A stretch of DNA of 64,000 nucleotides from Haplodiscus bocki (Eukaryota): positions 52,266,001 to 52,330,000 of the forward strand of contig OZ296649.1 of assembly GCA_965655095.1 (NCBI GenBank), written 5' to 3'. Shown here in pieces: positions 56,482-64,000 of the stretch. The position numbers and the translations under genes are program-made. Position 1 is the first letter of the stretch; each line of letters starts with the position of its first letter. Below the pieces are notes generated by a model. It worked only from the letters and a program-made list of their open reading frames with translations. It did not search any database and had not been told where the DNA came from.

Positions 56482-59400
56482 TATTATTATTATTAGGGAT
56501 TTACAGTCTTACACATGATAAAACTGAAGGGTTTATTCAACCCAAACTAAAAAATATTTGTTTAGCACCTAGTTTGGCGACATGTTGGACAAAGACATAG
56601 TTTGCGCCAGGTACAAGGGACCTGGGGATTGTATGCGTACTCGAAATGCTTCCAGTACTGGTCCAGGAGACGTGCTTTAAGGCCTTCTGGTTGAGACAGG
56701 TTTGTCATCGGGTGTAAAGGTTTGTCATCGGGTGTAAAAGATTTGCAAGCTTCGCGCTTCGATACCAAAAGTTTTGGCGTTGCACGTCATTTGAAATAGG
56801 CATTAGGTCAAAAAGCTGGTTTTGTCTCTGTGATGGTTTTAGGAATGGTTGCCAGTCAAAGTCAATTTTGTTCGATATGATATTGGAAAGAAGTAGAATA
56901 TCGTTCAATTCTAGGTACAGAAATAGGGCGAGGAGATTGAGCCTCTTCAAGGCTACAGTGTAGTTGGGTTCGCCGTATGCGAGTACCCATTTCACTGCTT
57001 TCCATTGGGTCTGCTCGAGCTTTCTGAGGTTAGTCTTCGAGGCGTACCAGACTGTACTACCATATAGGAGGATGGGCAGAACCATCGATTTCACCAATTT
57101 GAGTTTCGTGCTGGTTGATAGTCCCTCTACTGTGTTCCGTTTTAGGAAACAGAGGGCTGAGAAAGCTTTGCATGTTGTCTCTTGTATGTGCACGTTCCAC
57201 TTCAGATCGGCTGTCACATGGAGCCCAAGGTCTTTGGTGGACAAGAAGGGTACGGGCTCGTCAGCTAGTGTAAGGTTTTGACATGGGGAACCAGCAAAGC
57301 ACATGTGTGCACACTTTGATACTTTGAATTGCATTTTGTGCTTTGAGCACCACTGGTGGATGATGTCGAGGTTTTCTTGAAGATTGCTAGCTTCGCATAA
57401 TTTATGAATGCTCAGTAGTTTGGAATCGTCAGCGAAACTGCAGAAAGCACAGTTTAGGTTTTGCGGCATGTCGTAGATTATAGCAAAAAGAGAAGCGGGC
57501 CCAGTAGTGATCCATGGGGCACTCCGCTGAGTACCAGAGGAGATCAGATGCTGTGCCGTTTATTTCGACGTATTGTTTGCTATTTGAGAGGTAGTCTTCG
57601 ATAATACTCAGCAGTTTCCCTCCGACACCGATGTGTTTCAGTTTGTTAATGAGGATCGAGTGGTCAATTTTATCGAAGGCTTTGGCAAAATCCAAGTACA
57701 CAGCGCTTCGATGTTGGTGTCAGCAGTTTTGTTGGAGTAGATTGTGCCGAGGTACACAAGTAGCTGAGAGATTTTTGATTTTCTCTTTTGGAAACCGTGT
57801 TGGGACTGGTGGATCAGATTTGCCACGTAGGGGAACAAAGAATCGAATATGCATTTCTCCAGGATCTTCAAGTGTATACATAGGAGGGTGATTGGTCTGT
57901 AGTTATTACAGAGTGACTTGTCACCCTTTTTGTAGATCGGCTTAATTTTTCCTGTTTTCCAGGCGTCCGGGAACTTGCATTTGTCTTTGATAGCTTTGAA
58001 GAGGTGGGAGATGGACTTGGAGAGGGCCGGCGTTTTCTTGAAGAGAGAGGCTGGGAGTTCGTCGTGCCCAGAAGATTTGTTTTCATCCAAATATGAGATG
58101 ATTGATAGCACTTTGTTTTCCGAGACGTCGTAGTTTACCAGGGTTGGGCCAGTGCTTGCTTCGTTCTGACGTTCTTGGTTTCGTTCTTTTTGTGAGAACA
58201 CAGATTGGAAAACATGTTGAAAAGGTTTGCAAGTTCTCTGTCGGTCGTTGCTATCGTGCCGTTCCTAAACATAGATGGTGGCACGACTGGTGGCTTTTTG
58301 ATTGTCCTGTAGTATTTGAAGAGCTTGTTTCCGTCTCTAATGTCGGCTAGTAGCGTTTCGTATCGTTGTTGGTACGTTTTCAGTTGTCTGTTGCATGCTT
58401 CAATCGCTTTTTCTGTTTTGTCTCTGTTTCCAGTTCGCTGGAGGGACTGCACTCGTTTCAGGAGACGAGAACCTTCTTGAGACACCCATGGTGGAAGTGA
58501 CTTTCGGTGCTTGGTTCTGGCTGGCACGGTAGTTTTTAGTCTTTCGTCTAGCCAGTTTTGCCATTGGGAGAGGACGTTGGGGTTAGACCAACAGATCCCT
58601 TTAGAGGGGTCTGTGGCAATGCTTCTGTCTAGTTCGTCGTAGTCTGCATTGCAGATGCTGTACTCCATTATTGAGGGCCGGTGCGCAGCGTGGTGTTCGA
58701 AGTGTATTTCCAACTGGATTGCTTGGTGGTCGGAAGCCGCACGTCCATCAATCGAGTATTTCGCGTTGAGGATAGCGTCGTAGTTGCCCGTACAACAAAA
58801 TCGTCGTTGCATAGAAGGACGTCCAGGGTTGCTTGGGCGAACGTGGGGATTCTGATTTCTTGTGACACGTGTAGCTTTTCCAGTGCTTGAAGCACTTCCG
58901 TTTCGTATTGGTTTTCAGAGATGAATGATTCCCAGTTTGTTTTTGGCATGTTGACGTCACCTGTTAAGACGAGTTTGGGGATATTGGATTTCCTGCGGGC
59001 CTCTACCAAATTTTCCGATTTTGATATTGGCCAGCGGTAGGGACTGTTTTCGGGCGGGTTGTAGACGCATACAACTAGGGGAGTGTCGTCGATGGTGCAG
59101 CCAACGGCGTCTTCGTTATTGTTTACTTTTTCGTAGAGTTTATGTGGCATGTTTTCTTTTATCGCCAGTAGCACGCCTCCGTGTCTGCTTTTTGTAGTGT
59201 ATTTTCTATCTGATCGGTATATCTGGTACTCTGTCAGGCCGATCTCTCTGCTAGCAATGTCTTGTGGTAGCCAAGTTTCCGTGAGGGCTAAGATCTCGCT
59301 ATTTGAAAGAAGCGCTGCTTTTGATAGTGTATTTCTTCGTTTTTTCGATATAAGGCTTCTGACATTGAAGCAGCTGATGTGAAGACTTTGGTTGACTATT

Positions 59401-59508
59401 AGTCAACTATCGGCCAGTTTGGCCTCCTGGATTTTTTCAGAAGGTGCTTGGAGTTTGATTTCTGTATCGTTTACAAACAATTTGAGGTTACGAATGCGGT
59501 TACGAATT
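56482..59508 (-). mobile_element. 5'-truncated CR1/L2-like LINE (end of ORF1, APE endonuclease-RT ORF2 with frameshifts, (TAA)n tail)
   Basis: EN motifs CFNVRSL, LTETWL, HGGVLL, YNPP, GDVN, SDH; RT motifs NYRPITLL, QHGFQK, YLDFAKAFDKIDH, FADD, KDLG; C-terminal TWRKLCLCPTC; ORF2 stop at 56562; tail seen as tattattattatta at 56482-56495; at least 5 frame breaks. Confidence 0.93.
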
Positions 59509-59700: not shown

Positions 59701-62000
59701 ATGTTTTTTTTCAGACCCTCATTCAGTTGGAGTACAGTACTGAGTTTTCATTTTTGTCGAGAACGCGGTAAACAAATCACCCATCATAATAGTTCAGCAT
59801 TTAGTATTCTATAGAAAAGGCCCTTGGCAAAAGCAATTAAGACGTGTGATGCATTAGGAATTTGGAAAAAGCTAGATTAAAATTGGCGGGAAATCAGTCC
59901 GAACCTTTATCTAAAATACGAATTACTGCATCTTCTGAAAAAGTGAGCAATGAATTTTCGAATGGAGCCCAGCTTTATCTGCAGATTTATCTATATACAA
60001 TAAGCTCCCAATGGAACCGCAGGAAAACAAAAAAAAATCGCGTTTTATCCAAAAATGAATCAGTGAATTAAGAAAGAAGACATCAATTCGTACTTCAATG
60101 GCACAAAAATAACTGCATTTGGAACAAAAAACATGAAAATATTGCATTTGATTTTTGCATTACCGCTGGCACTGCGACTCCAACTGCTGTCTTTCACAAC
60201 CCTCTATAACATTCTACAAAACACTTGAGCATTTAGTTATTATGATGAACCATCACAAGATACTACATTTTTGCCGCGCCAAAACAAACAATTTTAACTT
60301 CCGCTGAATGACAGTGGTTCCCAGAGGCTTTTGAGATCACTCGTAGAACCCATACTACTTTGGTTCAAACATAGACAAAAATTTTCGCCTACTTTCAGAG
60401 ATTCACGCTACAGAACTTCAGAAAACTCCATGGACAAAGAATAAAAATAGAAGCGGAGCGGAAATGTGCAGCACATTAGGCTTATCAACTGAGATCAAAG
60501 ATTATGAGATACATTTGAAACCATCACCCAAAACATGATTGACATACTGCACCACCTGTCAACCAGACGTTTGTACGAAGAAGTCAAACTTTTGCCATTC
60601 GAGACGAGTACCTGCGTCTCCCAAACTCGAATATTTGCTGTCTATCATGCATTTTAAGGTTGGGCCATTTTACAGCCCAACTTTAGAGAGATTCGTGCTG
60701 TAAAAAACTCGAAAAAAAAACTTAGCAGCCCACCTAGTCTAATTCAAAACATTATACGTCACATATGACCTCTTGGGACACAGTTGAGCACTTCTTCCAG
60801 ACCAACGTTTGAGAAAGGAAATTTTTACAAAGCAAAAACAAGCATCTGCCAATGTATCAAGATAGGTTGCAATTGACCACTCAAGATATGCCTAGACTCT
60901 CTGATGACATCAAAATTGTGAAATTTGATCAGGATAAAAAAACTGGTCATAATAAGGTTCCAATTCAATTTGTTCCTCTCAGCCAGATAATGTGAAACCT
61001 ACTGTATCTCGATCAGTCAGTCAATCCTAATACTTAAATATCTCTTATTTCAGGACCTGATTGTTAAGTACGTCAGAGTTGCGTCAATCAAGGATTTTTG
61101 TTGTTTAAAAACAACCAAGCTATAGTAATAATTTTCTCCCGTCTGAGATTTTCATGACTGCTCGGGTACTCTTGAAAATTTACAAAAAAAAAACAAGTAC
61201 AAATAGTTTATTTGGTTCAGAACTCAAAAAGGGGATTTGATATTTTTTGGTTGTCAAAGAGTTCTGGAGCTGAAACCAAGTTCATCTGTCCTCGACTAAG
61301 GTTTTTTCTTTCAGTACATGTCGCCCACACCCTTAAAACAATCGGGGCCTGTTGAAAAAGACCATCATAAATCTGATGGAATCCAGTGTGTATGAAACAC
61401 CAAAGTCAAATTGGTCAGAAGACAGAACGGACCCATTGACTCTTTAGGAACGTAGAAAGGGAACTTTTATCCTTATATAGAAGAGTGGAAAGACAGCCTA
61501 AGTATCCATTTGCCTAAAATTGTCGTCCTTGTGGTGTACCGTAGTTCTTTTTGCAAGTCTCAAATTGTTGCTCTCATCTTTGCATTGTTGTTTTAAGCCG
61601 AGAAGCCACCATGTATATGGTGTACAATTTTAATCAATAGTGTTTGAGAACAATCACGCTTTTGTTGAATTACAATTAATCATGATTGGAAAATGAGATG
61701 TTATTACAATCATGCAAAGGAGACAGTAACTTGGGTGTTAGGCAGTTCGGAATTTGACGTCTCACTTGCAATCTGACCATCTCGAAAAAAAATCAAGTTT
61801 TGAATGAATCAAACTCATTTGTTGAGATTAGACTTGAAGAACTTTCAGATAAACCGCATCATTGGCAAATCTACACCTGTTCGTTTTTTTTTCAAACGAG
61901 TTACTGAAGACGTTCCCGCGAGCGGAAACAAAAAACATGATATCGGTAAGAGTGTTTTTTATAGCCACTAGCTGTTCCGAGTGTGTTTGCGGGATTGCTA

Positions 62001-62222
62001 TTCACGAGTCCGAAAATTAATTTTAATTCCCATGAGTCCGAAACATTGTTTGCTTGAAATTAACTAACTTATATCATTATTTTAAGAACTTCGGTGTAAA
62101 CTCAGGTAACTAGTACAAATTATTATTACTTGAAAACTGTATTTCGTCAACAATTTTCAATCAAAGGTTATTTATTAATTTTCGGACTCATGGGAATTAA
62201 AATTAATTTTCGGACTCGTGGG
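62001..62222. mobile_element. MITE-like element with 41-bp perfect inverted repeats
   Basis: 62003-62043 cacgagtccgaaaattaattttaattcccatgagtccgaaa is the exact reverse complement of 62180-62220; AT-rich non-coding interior; a related end (attttcggactagtgaata) occurs at ~45380. Confidence 0.85.
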
Positions 62223-62512
62223 AAGACACCGCTTGCGGGAACTAGAGCACAAGTTTGATAGAGTTTTCTCCGCCGTTATATAGTTTTTTGGAAAAGTACG
62301 GTCGGCAAGATTTTAACAGTGACAAAAGCACATGAAAACAAACTGTAGCATTGCTGAAACGATGAAAACAACCTACTACAGGGTGAAAGACACAAGGAAA
62401 AGAACACGTTCCTTGTTAATGTTGTGATAAACTTATTAAATAGATCTTTTCAGGGATTTGATGCGGGGGTGGCAGTTGACACTCCAGATCATTTGATTCC
62501 TAAATTTACTTC

Positions 62513-62566
62513 TCGGTATTGCCATAGTACTATCGGTATTAGCGTAGTACCATCGGTATTGGCGTA
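62513..62566 (+). repeat. 20-bp tandem repeat x2.7 upstream of LINE ORF1
   Basis: tcggtattgccatagtacta / tcggtattagcgtagtacca / tcggtattggcgta. Confidence 0.85.
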
Positions 62567-62704
62567 AAAACCTGGAGAAGTTTCCAATACCCTACTTCAA
62601 TCTTCTCAACCTTCAAGACACAAAGTACAACAAGAGGCCACCTTCTTAGGTTCCAAAAACGTTTTGTATTGATATAAATCAGTTGCAAACATTATTTCTG
62701 CAAT

Positions 62705-63460
62705 ATGGTCAAAAAAGGCAAAAAAAGTTCAACAAAAACTTGTCTATGCTCTACATGCTCTGCTGAATTATCAGACAATTCCAATTCCATATGTTGCGAT
62801 TCGTGTAATAACTGGCATCATGGGTCTTGTGTGAACTTATCTGCTGAAAATATTTTTTTCCTTGGGAGTGGTAATAACTTTTTCTGGAAATGCAACAGTT
62901 GTATTTCCTTTAAGGTTACGCCACTTAAAACACTGGAAGCGAAAATTGACTCCGTCCTATTCAAACTAGAAGAACCCAGAACTGAAACACAACCAGCTCA
63001 ACCCTCAAAACCTATAGAAGTATTACAAAACAATAAATATGATCATCACTATAGAGTTCGTATTTCCGGAATTAGTGAAAGCAAAGAAAAATCATTTATT
63101 GATAGACAATTTGCTGATAAAGAAAAAGTGGAAGAAGTCTTCAAAAAACTAAATGTCAATTATCCAATTATCGAAACAAACAGACGTGGTAAGTTCATTG
63201 AAGATTCCCAAGGAAAACTAATAGCTACTTTCTCATCACCATGGGATGCGCGTTTAGTAATATCTAGTGCAATTCAGAAAAAATTATTTGAAACCGATAA
63301 ATTTCTCATTACAACGGATTTATCACCATCAGATCTTGCAATAGAAAGAAAACTATTATCGATGCGCTATGAACTGATATCCAATGGTGTGCCAAAAGAA
63401 ACTCTGAAAATACGTTACTTGAAACTTTATCAAGGCAATAAAGAGGTAAACGTCGACTGA
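62705..63460 (+). CDS. LINE (CR1-like) ORF1 protein with PHD finger, intact
   Basis: C4HC3 PHD: CSTC..ICCDSCNNWHHGSC..WKCNSC; VRISGISE and ITTDLSP..ERKL motifs typical of the ORF1 RRM/C-terminal region; endonuclease follows immediately. Confidence 0.9.
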   Translation: MVKKGKKSSTKTCLCSTCSAELSDNSNSICCDSCNNWHHGSCVNLSAENIFFLGSGNNFFWKCNSCISFKVTPLKTLEAKIDSVLFKLEEPRTETQPAQPSKPIEVLQNNKYDHHYRVRISGISESKEKSFIDRQFADKEKVEEVFKKLNVNYPIIETNRRGKFIEDSQGKLIATFSSPWDARLVISSAIQKKLFETDKFLITTDLSPSDLAIERKLLSMRYELISNGVPKETLKIRYLKLYQGNKEVNVD

Positions 63461-64000
63461 CTAAATAAAGAAGCACAATGTCTTTTAATCAATTGTCAGA
63501 GCCTTCTCTCACTTAATTGTCGCTTTTCGTTAGTATCACAGGTAAATTTAATATCCGCCGACATTGTTTTGTGCACCGAAACTTGGCTCAATGAAAATTT
63601 TACACAAAATATTTTTCCTGACGACAATTATTCAATTATAAATCGTTCGGACAGATATATTGGTTCACACGGCGGTGTATTGGTTCTGTCTAGAAAATGT
63701 TTAAAAGTGCGCAAAGCACCTCTAAATGCCGATTTTATGTGCTCAGTTATCTCTAACTATGTACTTATTATTACCATATACAATCCACACTTTAACAGTG
63801 ATTTTCGCATCAAAGATTTTATTCTGACAGAGAATATCGATAAAACTATTTCCAAAGCCAAATGTGACAACGTTATTATTTGTGGTGATTTTAACATGCC
63901 AAAAATCGATTGGAACAGCATGACTGAAAGCACAACTTCAGAGTATCCCTTATTCCTCGAAATGTTAACTAAAAACGCCTATGAACAAATTATTACTTCA
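63461..64000 (+). CDS. LINE ORF2 apurinic-like endonuclease domain (open to the window end; no initiating ATG)
   Basis: LNKEAQCLLINCQSL..VLCTETWL..RSDR..HGGVL..YNPH..ICGDFNMPKIDW; no stop in 180 codons. Confidence 0.9.

What the first reader, a model, noticed from the sequence alone, without database searches (positions are those of the whole stretch)
63440..63740. LINE ORF1-ORF2 joined in frame by a single UGA-CUA stop: candidate programmed readthrough
Seen: ORF1 ends ...GTC GAC TGA (63458-63460) and the same frame continues CTA AAT AAA... into the endonuclease. The first in-frame ATG is 92 codons later (63737), past the conserved N-x-x-S and TETW motifs. Known: UGA-CUA is the classic readthrough context (alphaviruses; mammalian UGA-CUAG genes), whereas characterised LINEs express ORF2 by termination-reinitiation (L1, SART1). 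Inference: this element makes an ORF1-ORF2 fusion by readthrough, in the manner of gag-pol. I do not know this to be established for LINEs, but cannot check the literature here.
Basis: partly seen in the sequence, partly recalled or inferred. Interest (0 to 1): 0.85.

Follow-up and report, generated by a model that had tools for sequence, protein, structure and literature searches.

The report
LINE ORF1-UGA-ORF2 in-frame readthrough junction
A young, high-copy jumping gene (a CR1/L2-like LINE) joins its two genes in one reading frame through a single leaky-type stop (UGA-CUA), and because every relative sampled in its clade keeps this layout, its enzyme is probably made as a rare read-through fusion, as retroviruses make Gag-Pol; this has not been established for LINEs.

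Summary
ORF1 (62705-63457, 251 aa, PHD finger) ends in TGA (63458-63460). The same frame continues CTA AAT into the endonuclease. The first in-frame ATG is 92 codons later, past the catalytic N and E.

All 30 genomic copies examined carry GTCGAC-TGA-CTAAAT. The best-preserved copies have 923-924 open codons after the stop.

The layout holds well beyond this family. Eleven lineages of one deep clade, from at least 8 different samples, have in-frame TGA followed by CTA, CTG or CAACCA. The ORF2 tree supports 8 of them as a clade (SH-aLRT 97). Three more lineages elsewhere in the tree are also in frame through TGA. So all 14 in-frame junctions use TGA, whereas the same elements end ORF2 mostly in TAA or TAG. 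Other relatives with a homologous ORF1 mostly have ORF2 in another frame. A further group are single-ORF elements with a 2A-like motif, and the two nearest of these carry it at the same boundary.

No stimulatory RNA structure was found. The RNA runs gave no test.

Best reading (0.65): programmed UGA readthrough gives a minor ORF1-ORF2 fusion. Main rival (0.22): AUG-independent termination-reinitiation.

The papers searched hold only a passing suggestion for Paramecium LINEs. Other first-stage notes of this scan flagged the same junction elsewhere in this genome.

The parts
62417..62704 (+). 5' UTR of the full-length LINE copy. Homology among copies begins near TAATGTTGTGATAAAC.
   Evidence: Alignment of upstream flanks of 10-13 copies.
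62705..63457 (+). ORF1, 251 aa: N-terminal PHD finger (aa 15-66) and a C-terminal part ending ...LKLYQGNKEVNVD.
   Evidence: Pfam PF00628 E=5e-6. Homologous ORF1s in relatives.
63458..63460 (+). UGA stop of ORF1, the proposed readthrough codon.
   Evidence: 30 of 30 copies. No variant in DNA contigs.
63461..63466 (+). 3' context CUA AAU. CUA or CUG follows the stop in 10 of 11 clade lineages.
63461..64000 (+). Start of ORF2 (APE-type endonuclease) in the ORF1 frame. It runs off the window and continues to the RT and an (ACAT)n tail in L031. Catalytic N at 63491-63493; TETW at 63575-63586.
63478..63516 (+). Out-of-frame ATG opening a 12-codon ORF. It arises from the conserved A + TGY (Cys) codons and is not a start for ORF2.
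63737..63739 (+). First in-frame ATG of the ORF2 frame (codon 93). A start here would delete the catalytic N and E.
59400..59405 (-). TGA CTA junction of a second, divergent and decayed LINE. Its ORF1 remnant (up to about 59508) ends ...IRNLKLFVNDTEIK...LADS, then TGA CTA ATA GTC AAC ... ISCFNVRSL...LTETWL in frame, with no ATG.

Best explanation
The element is a roughly 3.9-kb CR1/L2-like LINE, a young family present in hundreds of copies or more. Its single mRNA encodes ORF1p (a PHD-finger protein) and ORF2p (endonuclease plus reverse transcriptase) in one frame, separated only by UGA in a weak-termination context (UGA-CUA). Most ribosomes terminate and make ORF1p. A small share, of the order of 1% by analogy with measured UGA-CUA contexts, decodes UGA with a near-cognate tRNA and goes on to make an ORF1-ORF2 fusion. 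This would set the high ORF1p:ORF2p ratio that LINEs need, in the manner of retroviral Gag / Gag-Pol. Shown here: the anatomy, its invariance in the family, and its conservation and recurrence across deep lineages. Inferred: the readthrough itself and the fusion product.
For: (1) There is no in-frame AUG before the catalytic N and E. The Pfam endonuclease match starts 16 residues after the stop. (2) 30 of 30 copies keep TGA CTA AAT. (3) Relatives with 27-38% ORF2 identity from other assemblies and metagenomes are in frame through TGA: L052 (two junctions), L053, L054, L055, L056, L058, L138, L139, L142, L143, the L089 group, and the second LINE in the window. That makes 14 of 14 in-frame junctions using TGA, whereas the ORF2 stops of the same elements are TAA 7, TAG 3, TGA 1. 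(4) The base after the stop is C in 12 of 14. In the clade, the next codon is CTA or CTG in 10 of 11, although these make up only 20-32% of Leu codons in the same ORF2s. The one exception, L053, reads CAA CCA, which fits the other classical readthrough motif CARYYA. (5) The ORF2 tree puts 8 in-frame lineages in one clade (SH-aLRT 97) with long terminal branches (0.08-0.94 changes per site, most 0.4-0.9). In-frame TGA arises at least 3 times on the tree. (6) The spacer from stop to N motif varies from 5 to 58 codons and is never out of frame. (7) Contrast group: 28 of 34 metagenomic loci with a weaker ORF1-profile match have ORF2 in another frame, with TAA, TAG or TGA stops. The in-frame state is therefore not the default. 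(8) The Met present after the stop in L054 is Ile in its 55% relative, so an AUG is not required. (9) The sister rows L067 and L081 are single-ORF elements with a 2A-like NPGP motif directly before the endonuclease, the same boundary. (10) PMC4132726: UGA-CUA alone gives 1.5% readthrough in HEK-293T cells, UGA is the best stop for this motif, 12 nt downstream suffice, and any stop followed by C is weak.
Against: There is no direct evidence of translation. The three RNA-seq runs laid on the element gave no coverage and so no test. There are no ribosome footprints and no peptides. No significant RNA structure lies in the 120 nt after the stop in any lineage (z from -1.3 to +2.0). Human L1 can start ORF2 without an AUG (Alisch 2006, as cited in PMC5972666 and PMC5009743), so lack of an AUG is not decisive. 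Three clade lineages (L053, L054, L138) do have an in-frame AUG just before the N motif. The lineages are not fully independent, and the in-frame state could partly be inherited from a single-ORF ancestor. L142 (UGA-GGC) and L143 (UGA-UAU) lack the favourable context.
Confidence: 0.65

Rival explanations
1. Termination-reinitiation without an AUG. Ribosomes terminate at UGA, release ORF1p, stay on the mRNA and resume at or near the next codon, making a separate ORF2p, as proposed for human L1. A variant is a stop-carry-on event at the real stop codon, resuming in frame.
For: This is the only mechanism with experimental support in LINEs: SART1 UAAUG, and L1 ORF2 independent of its AUG (PMC5972666, PMC3894237, PMC5009743). 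In 4 lineages the codon after the stop is CUG, the best near-cognate start. Three lineages have an AUG 2-10 codons after the stop. Sister elements use 2A 'pseudo-reinitiation' at the same boundary.
Against: Ordinary reinitiation does not need ORF2 to be in the ORF1 frame, does not need UGA, and does not need C/CUR after the stop. Yet 14 of 14 in-frame junctions use UGA and the frame is kept across spacers of 5-58 codons. CUA and CAA are not near-cognate start codons. There is no SART1-like downstream structure. Relatives with out-of-frame overlapping ORFs use other stops.
Confidence: 0.22
2. The junction has no recoding role. The in-frame TGA is a historical leftover from a single-ORF ancestor, and ORF2 is supplied in another way, for example from other elements in trans, from an internal promoter or from a spliced RNA.
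For: Single-ORF relatives exist. No RNA evidence could be obtained.
Against: The family is young and very abundant (96-97% identity, at least 209 candidates), so the masters that carried this junction were active. The stop identity and the following CUR are conserved on branches where synonymous sites should be saturated. In-frame TGA recurs independently.
Confidence: 0.08
3. UGA is a sense codon here, through a reassigned code or selenocysteine.
For: None beyond the UGA itself.
Against: There is exactly one in-frame TGA in about 1175 codons, and it always sits at the domain boundary. L056 ends ORF2 with TGA. The 3' UTR is only about 55 nt, and there is no SECIS or other Rfam match in L038:1-4000.
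Confidence: 0.02

Closest known systems
Retroviral and alphaviral programmed stop-codon readthrough (MuLV gag-UAG-pol; Sindbis/ONNV nsP3-UGA-CUA-nsP4) and vertebrate UGA-CUAG genes (OPRL1, OPRK1, AQP4, MAPK10, MDH1)
   Same: A structural or abundant protein is followed in frame by the polymerase. The stop is UGA followed by CUA (CUAG in L058). Stop and context are conserved at the nucleotide level across relatives. No long-range structure is needed for UGA-CUA(G) (PMC4132726, PMC13517186).
   Different: The host is a non-LTR retrotransposon. No downstream stem-loop or pseudoknot was detected. The window family has A, not G, at the fourth base after the stop. Nothing has been measured.
LINE ORF2 translation by termination-reinitiation (Bombyx SART1 UAAUG; human and mouse L1)
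   Same: A bicistronic LINE mRNA on which ORF2 must be made far more rarely than ORF1. ORF2 can lack a usable AUG.
   Different: SART1 has overlapping stop and start codons plus a downstream structure. L1 has a 63-nt spacer with stops. Here there is no AUG, no structure, and strict in-frame UGA-CUR.
2A (StopGo) single-ORF CR1/L2/Rex1/Crack LINEs (Odon et al. 2013, PMC3708506)
   Same: These are related APE-type elements. The recoding device sits at the N-terminal edge of the endonuclease, and the PHD domain can be part of the same polypeptide. Rows L067 and L081 are sister to the clade studied here.
   Different: 2A acts through the nascent peptide and yields separate products. The window element has no NPGP motif and has a real stop codon.
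Paramecium germline LINE 'Group 3' (PMC5405496)
   Same: [quoted passage not shown]
   Different: A ciliate host and a different LINE clade. It is a one-line suggestion with no context analysis or comparative test.

Membership tests
Programmed stop-codon readthrough, UGA-CUA(G) / 'type II' context | The stop codon is UGA | tested here: met
   (30 of 30 copies). 14 of 14 in-frame lineages.
Programmed stop-codon readthrough, UGA-CUA(G) / 'type II' context | CUA (ideally CUAG) immediately 3' of the stop | tested here: met
   The window has CUA-A. The clade has CUA x5, CUG x5 and CAACCA x1. CUAG occurs only in L058.
Programmed stop-codon readthrough, UGA-CUA(G) / 'type II' context | The downstream frame is open and protein-coding, and conserved beyond the stop | tested here: met
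   923-924 open codons follow the stop. EEP and RVT_1 domains are present. N11, S14, T39 and W42 are invariant.
Programmed stop-codon readthrough, UGA-CUA(G) / 'type II' context | Stop and context are conserved among relatives more than synonymous drift allows | tested here: met
   Tree. CUA+CUG make up only 20-32% of Leu codons, and ORF2 stops are mostly TAA or TAG.
Programmed stop-codon readthrough, UGA-CUA(G) / 'type II' context | Stimulatory 3' stem-loop or pseudoknot (present in many viral cases, not obligatory) | tested here: not met
   Strand folding on 11 junctions gave z from -1.3 to +2.0.
Programmed stop-codon readthrough, UGA-CUA(G) / 'type II' context | A readthrough product is detected | not testable with these tools
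   The RNA runs gave no coverage. No ribosome profiling or proteomics data were available.
CR1/L2-like (CR1 superfamily) APE-type LINE | ORF2 with an APE endonuclease and an RT, without RNase H | tested here: met
   Pfam PF03372/PF14529 and PF00078 only.
CR1/L2-like (CR1 superfamily) APE-type LINE | ORF1 with a PHD finger | tested here: met
   PF00628. PHD_Pygo in relatives.
CR1/L2-like (CR1 superfamily) APE-type LINE | A short 3' UTR ending in a microsatellite rather than poly(A) | tested here: met
   An (ACAT)n tail of variable length lies about 55 nt after the ORF2 TAA in 10 copies.
CR1/L2-like (CR1 superfamily) APE-type LINE | The RT groups with reference CR1, L2, Rex1, Crack or Daphne sequences | not testable with these tools
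   No Repbase or Dfam references were at hand. The exact clade name is left open.
Termination-reinitiation LINEs (SART1 type) | Overlapping or adjacent stop-start (UAAUG/AUGA) with an AUG for ORF2 | tested here: not met
   There is no in-frame AUG for 92 codons. The nearby ATG at 63478 is out of frame.
2A StopGo LINEs | D(V/I)ExNPGP motif upstream of the endonuclease | tested here: not met
   The ORF1 tail reads ...YQGNKEVNVD with no NPGP. The motif is present in relatives such as L062, L064, L067 and L081.

The most novel reading that the evidence does not exclude
A whole, ancient clade of metazoan CR1/L2-like LINEs expresses its endonuclease-RT as an ORF1-ORF2 fusion by programmed UGA-CUR readthrough, a Gag / Gag-Pol strategy in non-LTR elements. 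UGA readthrough, 2A StopGo and out-of-frame overlap would then be interchangeable devices that evolution has swapped at the same ORF1 | endonuclease boundary, with readthrough arising several times independently.
Probability: 0.5. Interest if true: 0.8.

Novelty: new variant of a known kind. Interest (0 to 1): 0.7.

Why it matters
How LINEs translate ORF2 from a bicistronic RNA is a long-standing open question. Reviews list only termination-reinitiation (SART1, L1) and 2A, and state that the mechanism is unclear (PMC3708506, PMC3894237, PMC5972666). A conserved UGA-CUR in-frame junction gives a simple hypothesis that a reporter assay can test for a large group of animal LINEs. If correct, ORF2p in these elements carries ORF1p (with its PHD finger) at its N-terminus, which bears on RNP assembly, cis-preference and chromatin targeting. 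The junction would also be a natural, compact readthrough signal that works without RNA structure. On the practical side, annotation pipelines that demand an ATG for ORF2 will mis-call these elements. The gene calls seen here started ORF2 at TTG, GTG or internal codons.

Tried and rejected
- **Downstream stimulatory structure.** I folded 123 nt from the stop for 11 junctions and none was significant.
- **Known RNA families and SECIS.** An Rfam scan of L038:1-4000 found nothing relevant. The only hit, mir-297, is the (ACAT)n tail and lies below threshold.
- **Expression, splicing and editing.** Three RNA-seq runs under the species label gave 0-16 partial reads, so there was no test. The DNA contigs only confirm high copy number and no variant at the stop.
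- **Out-of-frame ATG at 63478 as a start followed by a frameshift.** Rejected. It opens 12 codons and would bypass the N motif. Its recurrence in L052 and L056 follows from the conserved xxA-TGY (Cys) codons.
- **Wider survey of other LINE families in this genome.** A few copies with 322-444 open codons, against 276-300 in their families, hint that the frame runs on when the stop is lost. I did not count this as evidence.
- **Literature.** Nine full-text searches found no experimental case of LINE readthrough. My recollection that Arabidopsis ATLN LINEs have an in-frame amber stop could not be checked (Noma 2000 is not held) and is not used.
- **Exact clade name.** No reference LINE library was available. 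The protein atlas gave only 'animal' taxa.

Full report
**1. The observation**

The window is soft-masked eukaryotic DNA. It is G000:C2:52266001-52330000 of a 1.5-Gb chromosome-scale assembly.

- From 62705 an ATG opens a 251-codon ORF ending GTC GAC TGA, with the TGA at 63458-63460.
- The same frame continues CTA AAT AAA GAA GCA CAA TGT CTT TTA ATC AAT TGT CAG AGC and stays open to the window's end.
- Pfam finds a PHD finger in ORF1 (aa 15-66). Downstream it finds an Exo_endo_phos/Exo_endo_phos_2 endonuclease whose profile starts 16 residues after the stop, followed by RVT_1.
- The endonuclease N-x-x-S motif (N at 63491-63493) and T-E-T-W (63575-63586) precede the first in-frame ATG at 63737, which is codon 93.
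- Three nearer ATGs are out of frame. The one at 63478 opens only 12 codons.

**2. The element and its family**

- The copy starts near 62417, giving a 5' UTR of about 290 nt, and runs off the window.
- In the fetched continuation (L031) its ORF2 frame is broken twice, so this copy is dead.
- The family is young and abundant. There are at least 209 candidate matches at 96-97% identity, and word depth is very high in an independent DNA run.
- All 30 copies examined read GTCGAC TGA CTAAAT, and the DNA-run contigs show no variant of 5% or more at the stop.
- Copies L040, L043 and L049 have ORF1 of 251 aa, TGA, then 923-924 open codons in the same frame, and again the first Met is at codon 93.
- L038 has the same 924-codon frame, but its ORF1 ATG reads AAG.
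- ORF2 ends in TAA. About 55 nt later the element ends in an (ACAT)n microsatellite of variable length.
- Together with the PHD-type ORF1 and the absence of RNase H, this marks a CR1/L2-like 'stringent' LINE. The exact clade could not be named without a reference library.

**3. Beyond the family**

A protein search with the intact ORF2 found relatives at 27-38% identity in other assemblies and ocean metagenomes. I fetched DNA for eleven of them and 80 further endonuclease relatives from metagenomes.

| Source | Junction (all in the ORF1 frame) | In-frame ATG before the N motif |
|---|---|---|
| L052 | TGA CTG GCA | none |
| L052, second truncated element at 1415 | TGA CTG CAA | none |
| L053 | TGA CAA CCA | 10 codons on |
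| L054 | TGA CTG CAG | 2 codons on |
| L055 | TGA CTA TCC | none |
| L056 | TGA CTG ACA | none |
| L058 | TGA CTA GCT | none |
| L138 | TGA CTA AAT | 9 codons on |
| L139 | TGA CTA TCA | none |
| Second, decayed LINE in the window (minus strand, TGA at 59405-59403) | TGA CTA ATA | none |

- Their ORF1 tails share the motif ...NLKL[YF]..., so the ORFs are homologous.
- More distant elements are also in frame through TGA: L142 (TGA GGC), L143 (TGA TAT, 58-codon spacer) and the L089-L092 group (TGA CTC, 32-codon spacer, 386-aa upstream ORF). None has an ATG before the endonuclease.
- In total, 14 lineages from at least 8 different samples have in-frame junctions, and all 14 use TGA.

**4. Controls**

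- The same elements end ORF2 with TAA (7), TAG (3) or TGA (1).
- CTA plus CTG make up only 20-32% of the Leu codons in these ORF2s, yet they follow the stop in all 10 clade lineages that have Leu there.
- The single exception, CAA CCA in L053, fits the other classical readthrough motif, CARYYA.
- Among metagenomic relatives with a weaker match to the ORF1 profile, 28 of 34 loci have ORF2 in another frame. These typically overlap the ORF1 stop by 5-17 nt, and the ORF1 stops are TAA, TAG or TGA. None shares the ORF1 stop with the ORF2 frame.
- Another group are single-ORF elements with a 2A-like ...NPGP motif, often followed by a PHD finger, before the endonuclease, as described by Odon et al. 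(PMC3708506).
- The in-frame UGA arrangement is therefore not the default for these LINEs.

**5. Phylogeny**

I built an ORF2 tree of 56 rows (IQ-TREE quick, LG+G4).

- The window family groups with L138, L139, L052, L056, L053, L054 and L055 in one clade of eight rows (SH-aLRT 97). All eight are in-frame UGA.
- Terminal branches in the clade are 0.08-0.94 changes per site, most between 0.4 and 0.9. The clade is old, and synonymous sites should be saturated.
- Its sister is a pair of single-ORF elements (L067, L081) whose NPGP motif lies directly before the endonuclease, the same boundary where the clade has its UGA.
- L142, L143 and L089 sit elsewhere, among out-of-frame elements. The trait needs at least 3-4 changes on the tree, which means recurrence, each time with UGA.
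- Rows left out of the tree: near-duplicates (L073, L090-092, L104, L141, L120, L066, L119) and loci with fewer than 430 open codons.

**6. Mechanism**

The features that are conserved are those that define leaky termination, and ordinary reinitiation requires none of them:

- UGA, and never UAA or UAG;
- C, usually CUR, after the stop;
- strict maintenance of the frame while the spacer changes length from 5 to 58 codons.

Other points bear on the same question.

- CUA and CAA are not near-cognate start codons.
- The Met that follows the stop in L054 is Ile in its 55% relative, so an AUG is dispensable.
- Between L054 and that relative the second codon after the stop differs synonymously (CAG/CAA). 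Between L052 and L056 the changes in the first nine codons are two synonymous and two conservative. This is weak evidence that translation already runs in this frame directly after the stop.
- Loughran et al. (PMC4132726) measured 1.5% readthrough for UGA-CUA alone. They found UGA the best stop for the motif, 12 downstream nucleotides sufficient, and any stop followed by C weak. Alphaviruses use UGA-CUA as well (PMC13517186).
- About 1% readthrough would yield roughly one ORF1-ORF2 fusion per hundred ORF1p. That fits the known need of LINEs for much ORF1p and very little ORF2p (PMC3894237).
- PHD-endonuclease-RT polypeptides exist naturally in related single-ORF elements (PMC3708506), so a fusion is plausible as a working enzyme.

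**7. What speaks against, and what is missing**

- I found no significant RNA structure in the 120 nt after the stop and no Rfam family or SECIS.
- The only RNA-seq runs offered gave no coverage of the element, so transcription, splicing and editing remain untested.
- Human L1 shows that a LINE can begin ORF2 without an AUG after terminating ORF1 (PMC5972666, PMC5009743). Three clade members have an AUG near the N motif.
- A reinitiation or 'stop-carry-on' event at the real stop, giving separate proteins, remains the main rival. I put it at about 0.22 against 0.65 for readthrough.
- A reassigned or selenocysteine UGA is effectively excluded. There is one TGA per roughly 1175 codons, always at the boundary, L056 ends ORF2 in TGA, and the 3' UTR is only about 55 nt.

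**8. Comparison with what is known**

- The reviews of LINE protein synthesis that I could read list termination-reinitiation and 2A, and call ORF2 initiation an open question. None mentions readthrough (PMC3894237, PMC3708506, PMC5972666, PMC5009743).
- The only precedent found is a one-line suggestion for Paramecium LINE 'Group 3' (PMC5405496).
- I therefore class this as a new variant of a known kind: classical UGA-CUA readthrough used by a LINE clade. It is supported by comparative sequence evidence only.
- Other first-stage notes of this scan (unchecked except the one in this window) report the same TGA-CTA or TGA-CTAG junction in several other LINE families of this genome. The scan has seen this before on other DNA. 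That neither raises nor lowers the score.

**9. Limits**

- The lineages are related, so the simple probabilities above overstate independence.

Noticed in passing
window 58135-59508 (minus strand): A second, decayed and 5'-truncated LINE of a divergent family (endonuclease about 26-32% identical to the queries). It has the same in-frame TGA CTA junction at 59405-59400 and no ATG before the N motif.
   Followed up: yes
window 62000-62045 and 62181-62226: A pair of inverted repeats of about 45 nt (attcacgagtccgaaaattaattttaattcccatgagtccgaaa and its reverse complement) flank about 135 nt, just upstream of the LINE's 5' end. This may be a MITE-like element or a hairpin.
   Followed up: no
L062, L064, L093, L096, L098, L102, L123, L128, L131, L137 (metagenome loci): Single-ORF relatives in which a 2A-like ...NPGP motif is followed by a PHD-type Cys/His finger and then the endonuclease. 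In L067 and L081 the NPGP motif lies directly before the endonuclease.
   Followed up: partly
L063, L065, L066, L071, L077, L078 (metagenome loci): A recurrent overlap junction. ORF1 ends TAA AAAT (L078: TAA AAGT) 16 nt inside the start of the endonuclease profile, with ORF2 in another frame and a long Arg/Gly/Glu-rich N-terminal extension. This may be a frameshift- or reinitiation-type arrangement, in contrast with the in-frame UGA clade.
   Followed up: partly
L089-L092 (metagenome loci), junction at L089:2405: A family with a 386-aa upstream ORF that does not match the PHD-ORF1 profile and contains a (GQ)n run. It is followed in frame by TGA CTC TTG, a 32-codon ATG-less spacer and a 972-codon ORF2.
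   Followed up: partly
L038:4676-4862: The 3' flank of this copy holds an unrelated repeat with very high word depth in the DNA run. It contains repeated GATCTTATTCC units and is not part of the LINE.
   Followed up: no
L005 (G000:C5:79159063-79162462): One copy of the family aligns to ORF1 over 311 residues instead of 251 (64% identity). This suggests an insertion or duplication inside ORF1.
   Followed up: no
tables (G000, several contigs): The genome holds many further families of homologous ORF1 (open frames 256-300 aa). A few copies have 322-444 open codons, as expected if loss of the stop lets the frame run on into an in-frame ORF2. The DNA could not be fetched.
   Followed up: no
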